A DNA stretch of 64,000 nt, taken from NCBI GenBank assembly GCA_965202585.1, contig OZ241831.1, positions 28,520,001 through 28,584,000 of the forward strand, read 5' to 3'. The position numbers were made by a program, and so were the translations under genes. Within the stretch, counting starts at the first letter, position 1, and each line of letters begins with the position of its first letter. Below are positions 53,791 to 60,749 of the stretch, piece after piece. A model generated the notes under the pieces. The model did not search any database. It worked only from the letters and a program-made list of their open reading frames with translations, and had not been told where the DNA came from. The stretch is from Thalia democratica. Its lineage: Eukaryota.

Positions 53791-56534
53791 AAAGTATAAA
53801 GTGTTTTATGACATCATTTTTCAAATAGTAAAGATCTCTTATGATTTATAAACATATTTATTTTATGCTAGCTACATTAAAGTTATAATATAATTACATA
53901 TAATACTGTAGTTAATTTTACAGTAAATCTTTACATGGCAACATAAACAATTTTAAGTAGTCAAATTACTACTAATTCTATTTAGTTTTTATCTTATGTT
54001 AAGCTAACTATCATCTTAATCATCTTTTTTTTAAATTAAAGTCCACAAAAATGTTTAGTTCAAAAGTATAGTGTTGCTTAAGTGTTTGCTTTAAGCTCTC
54101 AAATTCTGTTCTATTATTCATGCACGTACTTAATCGGTCAATACATTATTTATGTACTAAAGTACTTTCATACCAGATTCTTCTTTTTGAATTAAATATT
54201 TTTTTTTTTTGATTTCATAATTTTTGTAGTAAACTGTAGTTATTATGTGTATCCAATCACTATTAAACAAAAAAAAAATATATTAAACAATATGAAGAAT
54301 ATCATAGGATAAAGTTAAATTACAGTTATCAGTTGTTTTTATTTAAACTAAACTTTTGACAAAACATACAATTTTGTTTTTAAACTTTTAAAATATGTAT
54401 TTCATTTTATGCAAGCTTTTTTTTCTAGCAAGTTTATAACTTTACAAACACACTTGAAAAACATTTAAACGTAGAGAGTGAGACTAACAAGCTCACAAGA
54501 AAATACTTATAAGTTTTTGGTATAGTCAGAATCGACAGAAAAAGTCTATTGTACTGAATTAAAAAGCAAGACAAACAAAAAGATCAAAAGTTAATAGTTC
54601 TTTACCTAAATTTATATAGTTTTCATTATATTAATTTTCTTTTTTCAAATAATTTTTCTGTATTTAACCTTTATTTAACACAAAAATAAAGTCAAGTTAA
54701 AGTAAAAAGCAAAATTAATTACTTTAAACTTTTTCATACTTATTTTAGTTAAAAATTAAAAAAAAAAATTTTGAAAGTTTTAATAGATTTCGAGGCATTA
54801 AAAAAGTAGTTTACTGAAACAAAGTTAATTTTAATTGCATATAAAATAAAATTTAATTTATAAATAACAGCTTTATACAAAAACTACGCGCAAATGCTTA
54901 TAAGATTTTATATGATATGCATATTAGGGTGCATCTGTTGCCCCAACTTTAGAGTTAAGCCTAGTTTAACTTTTAGTGCCCTATGCGAGTTTTAATGGAC
55001 CTTAAAAGTTCGACCTTCAAGTGTTTGGCTTAAGTTTTTTGTACATGTAGCATTTATCACAAAAGCACATTCGACGCGTTTTAACACGATTTTAAACAAA
55101 ATCTATAAATATTTTTTTTTTATTCTGTTCTTTTTTTCATTTTTTTTTATTTAAAGTTTTATAGAGAAAATCCAGGAATAGCTCCATGAAACTTTTTTCA
55201 GATTTTTTAAAAACGAGGAGAGGGTGTTTTTGTAACAATTGCTTCATGTCCAAAATTTAAGCTAAAAACGTAAAAATTAAATTTTCAGGTCCCATTATTT
55301 TTACATAAAGATTGTTTTCAGAAAAATGTAAATAGCGCGACGGTGGTAAAAACAAGAAACAAACTTTTTATTCGTGGTCCTTTTATGTAAATTACCACGT
55401 ATGAAAAGTTAAACTAAGCTCTACTGCAAATTTTTTTTCTTCAACTGATGAACTCTATTGCATTACTACGAAACTATGTGCCAAGATATGCAGACTACAG
55501 AGAATGCCCCTCTTTTTAATCAAAATGTACAAAATCATAAGAAACATTTTGTACTAAGAAACTTAACGTTGCGTTTTTTAGTTCATTGATATAACAGAAA
55601 GTGTTTATATAGAACATTTTAAATTAAAACAAAAACTAAAGTTCTTTAACAGATCTTGTCCTGAGACCAAATATTTTAGAGTTTTTCTTTTGTAGTATAA
55701 TAAACTAACAGTAACTTTTTTAAAGAGTCTTTAACGTATGAGATTATTAATTTTTTGCTTTATAAAAACTAAACCAAAGTTCATACAAGTATAAGTTTTT
55801 ATTCTTTTTATTTCTTTATGGTCATTGAAGAATAACTCCTTGTTGTATTAAATGAACTTAATAAGAATGTAAAATATCTGAAATAAGTATAAACATATAA
55901 ACTAAAATGAGCTAAAGGTTAATACTTTTACATCCCCTTCAACTTATTTAAGGAAAAATAAACTTAAAGTAAAACAAAGTTCAAATGAGGGAATCTAGAT
56001 AAGTATAAAATGCATTAAATAAAAATTTAAATAAATTGGATACACTGATAAAATACAATTCGCTTTAACCAAAGAAAACGTTTAAAAAAAAGGATTTTTT
56101 TAAATAAAGCAAACAAATAATATAATTTTCATACATCAACAAATAACAATACAATTAAATTCTACACAATTAAATATATCCAATTAAGGTGAATCCCTTC
56201 TGGCTTTGTTAATATTATCAATTTGCACCTGGGGCATTGAAGTATTTTAACCTAAGCAGAGCAAGAGGTACTTTCTTTTCTTTTGAAACCATAAAAGCAG
56301 TAGTTTGCTCATCCTCAACATACTTATGATCCCCATCAGCTTCATTTGTCTCACCAGTTCTGGCATCGTTCAAACCATCTGAAAACATTGAAGGCGAACA
56401 AGGATATTGATGACTTACATTGTCCTTCTGTGAGCTAGGTTGATCTCGACGCTAACCATGGAATGCCTTTGTATCGATACTTGTTGAGATTAAGCCATTG
56501 CCTTGTTAAAATATTGTTGAGAAAGGATCTTTAA

Positions 56535-56950
56535 GATCCCTTCTCCACTGACGCCCTGATGGGCTTCAGCGTACGCAACATGGCGGAACAAATTTTTTAA
56601 GTCCTGGACGACACATTCTCAACATTTAAGCTGTACTTGTTCCTTGAGGCAGACCGTATTTTAACCGCCTCCGTGGCCCACGTATCTGTCACCTCCTCTG
56701 TCATTGAGTTTCTTGACCGGGGAGTTCCCTTGGCATGCGCAACAGTGATTCTCCCACTACATAGTGACTGGTTTTTCATCTCATAGACTGCATTGTTGGT
56801 GTCACTGGCATCGTCATATTTCTCAAACCCGTACCACTGCTTAAGATTGATGTCACGGATTTTCCCGAATCCCTTGAAGAAGAGCCCCACGTCAAACTCT
56901 TTTGCTTTGGGAGAAAGCCCACCATGAAAACGCGTGTGCCGTTGCTTGAT
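56535..56950 (-). pseudogene. SRSF4/5/6-like: Intronless, decayed SRSF4/5/6 (SRp55/B52-like) fragment: RRM1, linker and start of RRM2
   Basis: Across frameshifts reads TRVF.GGLSPKAKEFDVGLFFKGFGKIRDINLKQWYGFEKYDDASDTNNAVYEM...RITVAHAKG, then YSLNVENVSSR..QDLKNLFRH..VAYAEAHQGVSGEGI. Confidence 0.85.
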
Positions 56951-56999
56951 GAAATTTCTCTATCATTTAAGTTTGCAACAACTTTAGAATGCTGAGGAG

Positions 57000-57440
57000 G
57001 CAGCTGAGAACCAAAAGTGGGAAAATCTCTATTTTTGATTAAAAGTTTGTCCATCGTTTCATACGAGAGAAAAAAATCCAGTCACTGAGTCACTGACACT
57101 GTTGCAGCTGGCTACATCATTCTTTGGAGACATTCCACTAACAGTAGCTCTGAAAGCGCTTAAAATACTTATTGGAATTTTGTTAGCAGCCGGAATTGTG
57201 ATTGATACAGGAAGTAAGTTATTTTTACTAAAACCAGCATCTTGAAAGTCTTCCATACCTTAAGATTTGACTTTGCACCAGTATCAGCTAACGCACTAAC
57301 CATAACAAACTTATTTATGCCGCTTTTAGTGATTTTAACTGATGCACGTGGGTTGTCAAATGTCTTGGCTCTACGCAAATTTCTTTTGTCAAAAATAATG
57401 TTGGTCAACAGAATTCGTTTATTAGCGTGTAATGACATTA
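57000..57440 (-). pseudogene. Gypsy aspartyl protease relic
   Basis: VSALADTGAKSNL (D-T-G motif), then across frameshifts FQDAGFSKNNLLPVSITIPAANKIPISIL. Confidence 0.75.
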
Positions 57441-57571
57441 CTTGTATATTCTGGTGGGTAAAACATCATCATGGATTTGAAAAGCATTAACCTTCTTTAA
57501 CTGGCTACGCCATCAAGAAAAATAATAATAAAGAAATAAGAAAGGTTTTACATTCTGAGTTTCTTTCCCTT

Positions 57572-57934
57572 TCAATGGATAAAACAAATTTTTACAGCGC
57601 TGGCAAGGTACATATTGGGAATTTTCCACTTCATTAAAAGTTTGTCATGAGCACATTGAAACAGTTGTATGCTTGCATTCTGGCTGCTTATGTTTGAATT
57701 AACTTTGAATGCCTTCCACCTGCGAATGTAGGCAAGCCATGTGTCTTGGCTGATCCCACGGTCCTTTTTTGGCCGAATCAGTTGAGGTTCATTTGGCATT
57801 AATACACTTTTTGAGGAATCAGAGTTCTTTTCATGCTCAATTTTATGCAGGTTCAGAAGCCTGTAAACTAACTTACATGAATCATCTGAGGTTTGGTAGC
57901 TGCATTCTTGAAATGGGCATTGTATCACAACCAT
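57572..57934 (-). pseudogene. Gypsy gag N-terminal relic
   Basis: CPFQECSYQT...LLNLHKIEH...PQLIRP...GISQDTWLAYIRRWKAFK...QLFQC, a pattern typical of invertebrate Gypsy gag. Confidence 0.7.
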
Positions 57935-60749
57935 ATTAAGATATTTTACATGAAGAATAACTCCTTGTTGAATTAAGTGAACTTAATAATAATGTAAAAT
58001 ATCTGAAACAAGTATAAACTTATGAACTAAAATGAGCTTAAGCTTAATACTTCTACAGTCATACTTATTTGTTAAACTTTGGGCTATAAAATTAAGTATA
58101 CTTGACTTATATTATATAAGTACTGTGTGCGTTTTTTTTTTTATTACTTATATAACACTTAATTGTGAGTATAGGAAATATAAGTCACAAAAATAATAAA
58201 TTTGTATAGAAATGTCAATTTATTTTGTTCGAAAATCACATAGAATTTCTACGAAGTAAGGTAACTAAACAAAAAAATCTTGAAGATAGTGCGTCTACCT
58301 GACAATATATCAACAACATAAGATTTGATCGGCTAAAAGTATTTAGATTTTAGAATGATAGGAAACTTTACACCAGTTACCAAAAATAAAGGGTTTTTAT
58401 GACAAATAAACACTGAATACTTAATAAGTGTTTTTTTCTTCTAGCTTAAAATATAGTGTTCGAGTAATTATTGTAAAACAAGATGGTTTATCAATATTAT
58501 TGCGTTTGCTCTCTGTTTTAAGGTTAAAACTTAATGTTAGCAAATGAGTATCTCATTGTTGAACCTATTTTTTAATTGGTTAAATTATTAAACTACATAG
58601 TTTTTAAATTTAAACACTGTTTAAGAAAGCATAATTTAAAAAAAAACAAAAATTTTGTAAACAACAAAAAAAGTAAAAGTATTTTGGTTTTTAGCTTATA
58701 GTTAGCCTATAGCTGGGTGTAAGTAAATGAAATAGTAAAAATGTTATTGTTTTTAGTTTAAGTTGTCACAGTTTTATTAACTTACTATGTTTTCTACAGT
58801 TTCAAAAATAAAAAACCTATATTGTTTTTTTTTTAAGTGGTAAAATACTTTAGTGTTTAAAATATAAATTTAAGAGTTTGTTAACAAAAAATCCTAGTAA
58901 AACAAGTTCACTGGAATATATAATAAAAACAAATTATACAGTATCCTTCTTTTTTTGTACCGACATATGTTTCTGTGTGTTAACGGATTAACACACTTCA
59001 ACTGGGTTCTGTAAAAAACAAATACTGTAAGAAAAAGAATAGAAGCTAAGGTAGGTGTATACATGTGTTCATTAAAATAAAAATAATTTCTACAGATTTT
59101 TAGAGGTTAATGGTTAATACTATGTAAAATACTTATTGTTGAATCCGAATGTTATAAAACTATATAATATTTGTAATTATTAAGTCCAAATTAAGTAAAG
59201 TAAACTAAAATACACAATAAAATAACAGATCATAATATAAACTACTTAGATGAGTTGAAGGAAGGACTAATTCAAATCCATTCACCGGTTGCTAACGATT
59301 GAACAAAATATACCTGATAATTACGTCACAATATATATGAACATTAGGATTAGCTATTTAATTTGTATTATAAAGTTAGACAATTTATTCTTTATGTTTG
59401 GAAAAACATTAAAGCGCTTTAATATGAAAAGTAATATGTAATCTATTGTGAATAAAAAATAAAACAACAAACATTAATTATTAGATCAATAAATTTAACA
59501 ACGGTAAAGACCATAAAAGTCACAGGAACTTGATATAATGTATATATTATTTATTAAATTTCAATAATGATTAAATATAAATTATAACAAAATCAAATTT
59601 AGATGCAGTTAAGAAGCAGATTTAGTTCAAATTTAAAAATTGAAAATTTAAGAAAACAAAGCACAAAAAAAAACTTGTTATTAAGCTTACAAAGCACTGA
59701 CCAATGATTAAGTTACGGCGACATACATAAAACAACAATGATTAAAATTGCATATATATTGTATATAATTATTAAAATATTGAAATAACTATTTATTGTT
59801 TTATAAAGAAGTCAAGTTTTTTAATTAAAGATCTTATACAGATATTATAAATATTAAATAATTAAGCTGTGTTATAAATTACACTTTGTGTTTAATACGA
59901 AAGTTAAAATGTAAAACATAAAACAACAAGGTAGTTATATGCTAAGTATAAACCTGCAGTAAAAAGCCTCTAGCCGTTCTATTGGGCGTAGTAGGTAAAA
60001 AAGCACGGTTTATCTGTGATTTGAATACAGGTTTCCAATTAAACTTAGAACTTATCACATAAAGATATGAAGAATTATATTCGGATGGTAAAATGAATTT
60101 ATAAAATGTCAGAGAATAGAAAGTGACATGTGTGAAACAAATATATAAATAATAAAAATATAATTTACTTAGGATATGTAATTAATAATTATATTAATAT
60201 ATGTTAAGTGAATGTGTGTGTTTATGTAAAAGGTAAATGAAAGGTGAGAAAACGCCAAGATGTTATTTGAAGAAGAACCGTCGGTTGTGTACACAGTTTT
60301 TTGAAATATCACGTCTTTTATTTAGTAATTGTTTATTATCTTCTGCTAAAATTGCTTTTCTTTCAAGGTTGCATATTTGAAAGATCTTGCTCGCGCTTTT
60401 TTATATTTTAACTATTTTTATGACTGTATAAAATCTCTGGCTTTTAAATACCTTCAGTTGCTAACTTTTGATATTTATGTTTGATTACTAAATATTAGTC
60501 ATGTTCAAGATGTTAAAAGGCATTTAAGTGGTATGCGAGTCGATAACCGAAAGGTTTTTTCGTGCACTAGTAGATCCTAGGATCAACTATCTAAAGGGAT
60601 TTTTTCGTTGTTCCATAAACAATATTATTAAAATATTGTTATTAAAACTTACAGAATTTTTAAACAGTAAGAATACATACATTTATAGCTTTTATATCGC
60701 ATAAATAAATTGTCATTAGATAAAAAAAGATTTCAAATAACAATTTTTG

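What the first reader, a model, noticed from the sequence alone, without database searches (positions are those of the whole stretch)
55826..58057. LTR retrotransposon whose pol is replaced by a captured SRSF4/5/6 splicing-factor cDNA
Seen: both LTRs (9 mismatches in 107 bp), the PPT and the GTCAT TSD are intact. After gag and protease the element switches into an intronless, GC-rich SR-protein sequence (RRM1 to mid-RRM2, 56950-56535). Established: LTR elements can capture co-packaged host mRNA by template switching. Inference: the chimera integrated as one unit, so capture preceded this insertion and sibling copies may exist. A transposon carrying RRM-only SR sequence without the RS domain could once have produced a dominant-negative protein or antisense/small RNAs against a core splicing regulator. 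This copy is now frameshifted.
Basis: partly seen in the sequence, partly recalled or inferred. Interest (0 to 1): 0.78.

Follow-up and report, generated by a model that had tools for sequence, protein, structure and literature searches.

The report
Retrotransposon carrying a captured splicing-factor fragment
This is a dead, helper-dependent jumping gene whose copying-enzyme genes were replaced by part of a host splicing-factor gene; about twenty copies carry the same fragment, which makes it a clear new example of an already described capture process.

Summary
Window 55826-58057 (minus strand) is an LTR element with 107-nt TG..CA LTRs (98/107 identical), a GTCAT target duplication and a polypurine tract.

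Its interior runs from gag and a protease-like region into about 460 bp of an SRSF4/5/6-type gene. Pol-bearing relatives (RT, RNase H, integrase: Ty3/gypsy order) have about 2.5-3.3 kb of pol at that position.

About 22 loci in this genome (roughly 17 independent insertions) carry the same cargo with identical junctions. So there was one capture, then amplification in trans. Every copy examined is broken.

The parent is an intact, transcribed 238-codon gene on the same chromosome. The cargo covers its codons 1-191, with short sequence similarity at both junctions, and both junctions keep the reading frame.

The window copy has three later deletions, one of which removed the true 3' junction.

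The parent coding sequence has no introns, so cDNA origin cannot be proven. RNA template switching (LTR-mediated retroposition, Tan et al. 2016) is the likeliest route. Nothing supports a dominant-negative or small-RNA role.

The scan had not noted this cargo family before. It had noted separate Gag-Y-box elements in this genome.

Verdict: a new member of a known kind, of moderate interest.

The parts
55821..55825 (.). Target-site duplication GTCAT, left copy
   Evidence: Read directly; identical to 58058-58062.
55826..55932 (-). 3' LTR of the element (107 nt, TG..CA)
   Evidence: Direct repeat D1; 98/107 identical to the other LTR.
55933..55944 (-). Polypurine tract AGTTGAAGGGGA next to the 3' LTR
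   Evidence: Siblings carry AGCTGAAGGGGA at the same place.
55945..56491 (-). 3' internal region shared with pol-bearing relatives (rest of the integrase C-terminal coding region, then AT-rich non-coding sequence)
   Evidence: Element positions 1567-2125 match both autonomous and cargo copies at 77-86%.
56491..56495 (-). Breakpoint of a secondary deletion of about 217 bp. It removed the end of the cargo, the true cargo/integrase junction and about 200 bp of integrase C-terminal coding sequence.
   Evidence: Siblings have 217 bp here (L002 positions 2734-2952; sequences).
56495..56956 (-). Captured SRSF4/5/6-type cargo: parent nt -1 to +553 (RRM1, Gly-rich linker, most of RRM2). The start codon is mutated to ATT (56955-56953). 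There are nine deletions, including about 64 bp lost from the Gly-rich linker around 56661/56662.
   Evidence: 85% identical to parent L032:1425-1981; RRM_1; deletions listed.
56957..56959 (-). 5' junction microhomology AGA, shared by the element and the parent 5' UTR
   Evidence: Junction comparison of 15 cargo copies, 12 pol-bearing copies and the parent.
56960..57330 (-). Protease-like region and the start of the pol frame (ALADTGA motif inside ORF 57169-57438)
   Evidence: Motifs read. No profile hit.
57331..57934 (-). Gag remnant. About 459 bp are deleted at about 57641, between 7-nt repeats.
   Evidence: Siblings have about 459 bp between element positions 404-420 and 414. A gag piece of a relative resembles Retrotrans_gag by atlas features.
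57939..57950 (-). Primer-binding-site position: TGTAAAATATCT, complementary to AGATATTTTACA inside the LTR (57993-58004)
   Evidence: Inverted repeat I3; 12-nt complement, and the motif is conserved after the 5' LTR in most copies.
57951..58057 (-). 5' LTR of the element
58058..58062 (.). Target-site duplication GTCAT, right copy

Best explanation
The window holds one decayed copy of a non-autonomous Ty3/gypsy-type LTR retrotransposon subfamily. The subfamily arose once, when about 578 bp of a host SRSF4/5/6-type gene replaced most of pol: RT, RNase H, and the integrase zinc finger and core. The captured piece runs from 2-4 nt before the start codon to codon 191 and is in sense orientation. 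The most likely route is inferred, not shown. During minus-strand DNA synthesis in a virus-like particle, reverse transcriptase left the element RNA in the integrase C-terminal region. It jumped there at a patch of 14/18 similarity onto a co-packaged SR mRNA, and returned to the element RNA just after protease at a 3-nt match. The chimera kept its LTRs, polypurine tract, gag and protease-like region, and both junctions preserved the polyprotein frame. Enzymes of pol-bearing relatives then mobilised it in trans to about 17 or more new sites, in the same burst that spread those relatives. All copies examined are now broken. The window copy has the least diverged LTR pair among those measured and has lost three further internal segments. 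It most probably does nothing today.
For: Structure: LTRs, target duplication and polypurine tract. Replacement of pol: pol-bearing copies match element positions 1-1101 and 1567-2232, with 2.7-3.5 kb between them that carries RVT_1, RT_RNaseH_2, Integrase_H2C2 and rve. Parent gene: intact 238-aa ORF at L032:1429-2145, with two RRM_1 domains, best PDB match human SRSF6, and covered by RNA-derived contigs. Single capture: the same 5' junction in 15 copies and the same 3' junction in 11 copies. Copy number: about 22 cargo loci, of which three pairs are segmental duplicates while L002 and L003 share only the element. Microsimilarity: AGA at the 5' junction; a 1-nt overlap plus the 9-nt identity AGGAAGTTG close by at the 3' junction. 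Orientation and frame: sense, and in frame at both junctions. Timing: a star-like tree mixes cargo and pol-bearing copies, and LTR K2P values are 0.09-0.21. Older allele: cargo copies carry C where the reference parent has T at L032:1446 and 1452, as contigs from other samples do. The mechanism matches published LTR-mediated retroposition (PMC5131818).
Against: The parent coding sequence has no intron, so an RNA intermediate is not demonstrated, and DNA-level capture would give the same product. A 3-nt and a 1-nt overlap are short compared with the 6-bp median reported by Tan et al.. The protease has no profile support. No tRNA-type primer-binding site was recognised. Transcription of the chimeric copies was not tested. 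Exact junction strings were absent from public metagenome contigs.
Confidence: 0.75

Rival explanations
1. Capture happened at the DNA level. A genomic element copy suffered a break or deletion in pol and was repaired with a piece of the SR gene as filler (microhomology-mediated end joining or synthesis-dependent copying). The repaired copy was then transcribed and amplified like any non-autonomous element.
For: The parent is intronless over the captured part, so nothing marks an RNA intermediate. Junction overlaps are only 3 nt and 1 nt, which also suits end joining. The parent lies on the same chromosome, C7.
Against: Sense orientation, exact replacement of element sequence and a switch inside an 18-nt patch of 78% similarity are what template switching predicts. 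The family also produces many other internally deleted derivatives. No parent flanking DNA was co-captured.
Confidence: 0.2
2. The cargo was useful to the element or acted on the host. The in-frame Gag-protease-RRM1-RRM2 polyprotein gave the element an extra RNA-binding module or interfered with splicing, and selection kept it. It would be one of several acquisitions of host RNA-binding domains by retroelements of this genome.
For: Both junctions are in frame (about 1 in 9 by chance), and the cargo starts 2-4 nt before the ATG, avoiding the in-frame UTR stop 24 nt upstream of the ATG. Most breaks in the cargo are private to single copies. The genome holds at least 150 cold-shock-domain loci, most with open frames of several hundred codons (commonly about 611), which earlier notes ascribe to Gag-Y-box elements.
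Against: Every copy examined is broken; the longest open frame through the cargo is 189 aa. The phylogeny is a single burst, leaving no time for selection to be seen. Several breaks are shared by independent copies: a stop at codon 191 in L008, L010 and L030, a stop at codon 144 in L003, L005/L006 and L008, and a 1-nt deletion at about nt 455-456 in L002, L004 and L010. That suggests transposition continued after the frame was broken. The family has only about 22 loci, against hundreds for the cold-shock family. The 3rd-codon-position excess (280/225/632) is confounded by GC3 decay and by the parent's own evolution.
Confidence: 0.1
3. The 5' junction was made by splicing: a read-through transcript from an element upstream of the SR gene was spliced to an acceptor just before the ATG, as in oncogene capture by retroviruses.
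For: The parent reads ...ttttcaaccacag|aaATG, which looks like an acceptor, and the junction falls within -2 to +1 nt of it.
Against: A contig from a transcript-like run is colinear with the genome from L032:1300 through this site into the coding sequence, at the same depth as single-allele contigs of the coding sequence. A related species' 254-aa product extends upstream with residues resembling the in-frame translation of this genome's upstream DNA. The element has no GT donor at the junction.
Confidence: 0.04
4. An ordinary processed pseudogene of the SR gene inserted later into a pre-existing element.
For: None beyond the presence of intronless gene sequence inside an element.
Against: The cargo has no poly(A) tail and no separate target duplication. 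Pol is replaced rather than interrupted. Only codons 1-191 are present. The same junctions occur in about 22 loci with different flanks.
Confidence: 0.01

Closest known systems
LTR-mediated retroposition: chimeric retrocopies inside LTR retrotransposons (Tan et al. 2016, Genome Res, PMC5131818)
   Same: Part of the element's internal ORF is replaced by a partial host gene copy in sense orientation. There is short microsimilarity at both switch points. The chimera behaves as a non-autonomous element and undergoes secondary retroposition.
   Different: Here the parent has no introns, so RNA origin is unproven. Amplification is larger (about 22 loci against one or a few insertion sites). Both junctions keep the polyprotein frame. 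The host appears to be a marine planktonic animal, a pelagic tunicate according to an earlier unchecked scan note.
Bs1 of maize (Jin and Bennetzen 1994; Elrouby and Bureau 2001, 2010; reviewed in PMC13317346)
   Same: An LTR retroelement that lacks pol, carries fragments of host genes fused into a hybrid ORF, and is mobilised in trans.
   Different: Bs1 carries pieces of three genes and is expressed as a new chimeric gene. This element carries one fragment, and every copy seen is broken.
Acute transforming retroviruses (v-onc transduction; Swain and Coffin 1992, cited)
   Same: Replication genes are replaced by an in-frame host coding segment, the element depends on a helper, and the 3' junction forms by non-homologous recombination at a short similarity.
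   Different: There is no sign of a splicing-made 5' junction and no evidence of any effect on the host. This element is endogenous and dead.
Gag-Y-box (cold-shock domain) LTR elements noted earlier in this same genome (s1-311108, s1-311113)
   Same: LTR retroelements of the same genome carrying an in-frame host RNA-binding domain, with pol-less derivatives. I confirmed at least 150 cold-shock-domain loci, many with open frames near 611 codons.
   Different: That family is young, intact and very numerous, and its domain sits at the nucleocapsid position of Gag. The SR cargo sits after protease in place of pol, and its family is small and decayed.

Membership tests
LTR retrotransposon, Ty3/gypsy type (non-autonomous derivative) | Two direct LTRs with TG..CA ends, flanked by a short target-site duplication | tested here: met
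   107-nt LTRs, 98/107 identical, with a 5-bp GTCAT duplication. Perfect 5-bp duplications also flank L059, L060 and L063.
LTR retrotransposon, Ty3/gypsy type (non-autonomous derivative) | Polypurine tract directly upstream of the 3' LTR | tested here: met
   AGTTGAAGGGGA in the window; AGCTGAAGGGGA is conserved in siblings.
LTR retrotransposon, Ty3/gypsy type (non-autonomous derivative) | Primer-binding site directly downstream of the 5' LTR | tested here: inconclusive
   By eye there is no TGG-start tRNA-type site; no tRNA comparison was run. Instead a conserved 12-nt motif complements an LTR-internal segment, as in Tf1-type self-priming. Priming itself was not tested.
LTR retrotransposon, Ty3/gypsy type (non-autonomous derivative) | Pol domain order RT - RNase H - integrase in the autonomous relatives | tested here: met
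   RVT_1 (1.4e-6), RT_RNaseH_2 (0.007, weak), Integrase_H2C2 (6.6e-9) and rve (3.7e-5) occur in that order along L059 and L055. All these copies are fragmented.
LTR retrotransposon, Ty3/gypsy type (non-autonomous derivative) | Gag and aspartic protease upstream of pol | tested here: inconclusive
   Gag: atlas features 0.91-0.92 to Retrotrans_gag clusters, with no Pfam hit. Protease: only the DTGA and ILG motifs, with no Pfam or PDB hit.
LTR-mediated (template-switch) chimeric retrocopy | Host sequence replaces element sequence, lies in sense orientation, and has microsimilarity at both junctions | tested here: met
   AGA at the 5' junction; a 1-nt overlap inside a 14/18 similar patch at the 3' junction.
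LTR-mediated (template-switch) chimeric retrocopy | The copy lacks the parent's introns (RNA intermediate) | tested here: inconclusive
   The parent coding sequence is itself uninterrupted and colinear with RNA contigs, so the test has no power.
LTR-mediated (template-switch) chimeric retrocopy | Secondary retroposition of the chimera | tested here: met
   About 22 loci share the junctions. L002 and L003 have unrelated flanks and separate target duplications.
SRSF4/5/6-type SR protein (parent gene and cargo) | RRM1, a pseudo-RRM with the SWQDLKD-type motif, and a C-terminal RS domain | tested here: met
   This holds for the parent: two RRM_1 stretches (1.9e-27), GWQDLKD and an RS tail, and best PDB matches SRSF6 RRM2 (7e-30) and RRM1 (1e-25).
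SRSF4/5/6-type SR protein (parent gene and cargo) | The cargo itself encodes a complete SR protein | tested here: not met
   The cargo ends after codon 191 of 238. The end of RRM2 and the whole RS domain are absent.
LINE-type processed pseudogene | Poly(A) tail and its own target-site duplication around the gene copy | tested here: not met
   Neither is present at the cargo borders in any copy.

The most novel reading that the evidence does not exclude
The in-frame RRM1-RRM2 cargo was not a passive passenger. As part of a Gag-protease-RRM polyprotein it served the element as an extra RNA-binding or packaging module, or disturbed host splicing. On this reading it is one case of a lineage-wide habit of LTR retroelements in this marine animal of acquiring host RNA-binding domains: a cold-shock domain, a KH domain according to earlier notes, and here RRMs.
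Probability: 0.1. Interest if true: 0.7.

Novelty: new member of a known kind. Interest (0 to 1): 0.38.

Why it matters
This is a clean natural example in an animal of an LTR retrotransposon that swapped its pol for part of a host gene and then multiplied about twenty-fold as a helper-dependent chimera. Both junctions are preserved in sibling copies and the intact parent gene is still identifiable. It shows how RNA-binding domains can be shuffled into retroelement polyproteins. Together with the much larger Gag-cold-shock family in the same genome, it suggests that such captures recur in this lineage. It does not reveal a new mechanism, and the copy in the window is inert.

Tried and rejected
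1. Splice or trans-splice acceptor idea for the 5' junction. The parent reads cag|aaATG, but a transcript-like contig is colinear from L032:1300 into the coding sequence, and a related species' longer product fits a colinear UTR. Rejected.

2. Proof of cDNA origin through exon junctions. This is impossible because the parent coding sequence is intronless.

3. Profile support for the protease and gag. Pfam and PDB searches found nothing for either; gag has only lead-level atlas support.

4. Monophyly of cargo copies from a tree of the gag and protease-like region. The tree is star-like and unresolved. Labels cluster (3 changes against 10.3 when shuffled), but a single clade is neither shown nor excluded. 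The identical junctions are the real evidence for one capture.

5. Selection on the cargo. Codon-position counts are confounded, and a few shared stops or frameshifts argue against a need for the frame. Inconclusive.

6. Chimeric junction strings in public metagenome contigs: no exact match in two scans. This is uninformative.

So three cargo loci (C6:65.7 Mb, C4:37.2 Mb, C2:56.8 Mb) and the cold-shock elements could not be read. Reads were laid on the parent gene, so expression and small RNAs of the chimeric copies were not examined.

8. Organism identity was not established here. An earlier unchecked note says pelagic tunicate. I can add only that the parent gene occurs in marine metatranscriptome runs.
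Full report
**What is in the window**

The element lies on the minus strand, at window 55826-58057.
- Two 107-nt direct repeats (55826-55932 and 57951-58057) begin with TG and end with CA. They differ at 9 positions (K2P 0.089).
- They are flanked by GTCAT on both sides (55821-55825 and 58058-58062).
- A purine run, AGTTGAAGGGGA, abuts the 3' LTR.
- Reading the minus strand gives a Cys/His-rich gag-like ORF, then a stretch with ALADTGA and ILG motifs, then an RRM-containing sequence in shifting frames.
- GC rises to 0.44-0.49 in the cargo, against 0.20-0.27 in the DNA flanking the element.

The cargo is a little longer than reported, running from about 56956 down to about 56495.

**The family**

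A search of the window's own 802-Mb assembly with the element gave 91 matches from only 40 scored of 655 candidates. Mapping them shows two kinds of copies.

- The first kind matches element positions 1-1101 and 1567-2232, with 2.7-3.5 kb in between. That interval carries RVT_1, a weak RT_RNaseH_2 match, Integrase_H2C2 and the integrase core rve, in that order. This is the Ty3/gypsy arrangement. All such copies are fragmented into short open frames.
- The second kind matches the window copy through the SR-like segment as well.

A search with the cargo of sibling L002 found about 22 cargo-bearing loci plus one other locus, the parent gene.

**The parent gene**

The best hit outside the elements is an uninterrupted 238-codon ORF at G000:C7:1807480-1808196 (L032:1429-2145), 26.8 Mb away on the same chromosome.
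- It has two RRM_1 domains, a glycine-rich linker, the GWQDLKD motif of the pseudo-RRM and a short RS tail.
- Its best matches among solved structures are human SRSF6 RRM2 (7e-30) and RRM1 (1e-25).
- Thirteen proteins at 90% identity or more exist in public collections.
- Contigs from marine metatranscriptomes and from a transcript-like run of the organism are colinear with the coding sequence.

It is therefore a real, expressed, intronless gene.

**The junctions**

I compared 15 cargo copies, 12 pol-bearing copies and the parent at the 5' junction, and 11 cargo copies (12 with the window, whose junction is deleted), 13 pol-bearing copies and the parent at the 3' junction. All cargo copies that retain a junction share the same one.

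- 5' junction: element ...AATGATAAAGA is joined to AATGTCATCAAAC... of the parent. The trinucleotide AGA is common to both partners. The cargo therefore starts 2-4 nt before the ATG.
- 3' junction: parent ...GGAACYGAAC is joined to element ACAAAGCTAGGAAGTTGCGACC.... There is a 1-nt overlap, and the two partners are 14/18 identical over the adjoining stretch, including nine identical bases (AGGAAGTTG).
- The 3' junction falls after coding nucleotide 574, that is codon 191 of 238.

The cargo thus comprises RRM1, the linker and RRM2 without its end, and lacks the RS domain. It has no poly(A) tail and no target duplication of its own.

Both junctions keep the reading frame. Upstream, the pol frame runs ...NLNDKE into MSSNNGTRVF. 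Downstream...DELDGTE runs into HKARKLRPLYVGS..., the integrase C-terminal region.

**What happened to the window copy**

Relative to siblings such as L002 (2,988 bp), the window copy (2,232 bp) has lost three segments:
- about 459 bp of gag, at about 57641;
- about 64 bp of the glycine-rich linker, near 56661;
- about 217 bp at 56491-56495.

The last deletion removed the true 3' junction. What looks like the end of the cargo in this copy is therefore secondary. The cargo also has six frameshifting deletions.

**History**

- A maximum-likelihood tree of the shared gag and protease-like region is star-like, with terminal branches of 0.02-0.13. Cargo and pol-bearing copies are intermingled, but the labels cluster (3 changes against 10.3 when shuffled).
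- LTR pairs differ by K2P 0.09 (window, the lowest measured) to 0.20 in cargo copies, and by 0.11-0.21 in pol-bearing copies.
- Three pairs of cargo loci are segmental duplicates with homologous flanks. L002 and L003 share only the element. That leaves roughly 17 independent insertions.
- Cargo copies are 77-88% identical to the parent. Changes are strongly biased from G/C to A/T, and there is an excess at third codon positions (280/225/632). GC3 decay and the parent's own evolution confound that excess.
- At L032:1446 and 1452 the cargo copies carry C, as do contigs from other samples, whereas the reference parent has T. The capture therefore drew on an older allele.

**Mechanism**

The pattern is the one described for LTR-mediated retroposition (Tan et al. 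2016, PMC5131818). Element sequence is replaced rather than interrupted. The cargo is a partial gene copy in sense orientation. Short similarity sits at both switch points. The chimera was then retroposed again. The same pattern is seen in Bs1 of maize.

I therefore favour two template switches during minus-strand synthesis in a particle that had co-packaged the SR mRNA, followed by mobilisation in trans. This step is inferred. Because the parent has no introns, a DNA-level repair event cannot be excluded; I give it about 0.2.

I considered a splicing-made 5' junction, because the parent reads cag|aaATG. A transcript-like contig runs colinear from L032:1300 through that site, at the same depth as single-allele contigs of the coding sequence. 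A related species' longer product also fits a colinear UTR. I reject that idea.

**Function**

Nothing indicates a present function.
- Every copy examined is broken, and the longest open frame through a cargo is 189 codons.
- Most breaks are private to single copies or to segmental-duplicate pairs, which fits a rapid burst from an open-frame master.
- A stop at codon 191 is shared by L008, L010 and L030.
- A stop at codon 144 is shared by L003, L005/L006 and L008.
- A 1-nt deletion near nt 455-456 is shared by L002, L004 and L010.
- These shared breaks suggest that copies kept moving after the frame was interrupted.

The double in-frame fusion (about 1 in 9 by chance) and the start just before the ATG leave a small chance that the RRMs were used by the element.

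**Context in the same genome**

Earlier scan notes describe LTR elements whose Gag is fused to a host Y-box cold-shock domain, with relatives carrying a KH domain. I confirmed independently that the genome holds at least 150 cold-shock-domain loci (519 candidates), many with open frames of about 611 codons. I could not fetch them for comparison. The scan had not recorded the SR-cargo family before.

**Limits**

- Two exact-match scans of metagenome contigs for the junctions found nothing.

**Verdict**

This is a new member of a known kind (a chimeric, non-autonomous LTR retrotransposon made by gene capture). It is well documented here by its siblings, its parent gene and both junctions. Interest is moderate.

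Noticed in passing
window 57939-57950 and 57993-58004 (also L063, L055, L060 and others): The 12 nt directly after the 5' LTR (TGTAAAATATCT) are the exact complement of an LTR-internal segment (AGATATTTTACA). The post-LTR motif is conserved in most copies of the family. No TGG-start tRNA-type primer-binding site was recognised by eye. This resembles Tf1/Tj1-type self-priming of reverse transcription (PMC4600332).
   Followed up: partly
own genome, e.g. G000:C5:64694042-64709425 and at least 150 other loci: Cold-shock domains (PF00313) occur at 150 or more loci (519 candidates), most inside stop-free frames, many of about 607-611 or 688-699 codons. One tandem run of five lies 3.8 kb apart. This fits the Gag-Y-box retroelement family of earlier notes. 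The sequences could not be fetched.
   Followed up: partly
L059, L060, L061, L063 and window 55821-55825: Readable 5-bp target duplications of this family are often GTTAT or GTCAT (the window's reads GTCAT on the plus strand, ATGAC in element orientation), which hints at a target-site preference.
   Followed up: no
L005/L006 (C1:32.32 and 32.33 Mb), L036/L039 (first about 35 kb of contigs C9 and C10), L041/L043 (C1:41.9 and 93.2 Mb): Three pairs of cargo-bearing copies sit in segmental duplications with homologous flanks (87-93% identity). One pair lies at the starts of two large contigs, possibly subtelomeric.
   Followed up: partly
L016, L058/L022, L062, L066: The same LTR family has several other internally deleted derivatives, with pol partly removed at different breakpoints. 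Deletion or recombination within pol is therefore frequent in this family.
   Followed up: no
L032:1-107 (G000:C7:1806052-1806158): A short stretch 1.3 kb upstream of the parent gene has enormous depth in a genomic run (about 1.2 million against about 100 elsewhere). It is a very high-copy repeat.
   Followed up: no
L032:1429-2145: The parent gene shows many differences between the reference and contigs of other samples, mostly at third codon positions, and two alleles in one run. This points to high polymorphism or a closely related species in the data.
   Followed up: no
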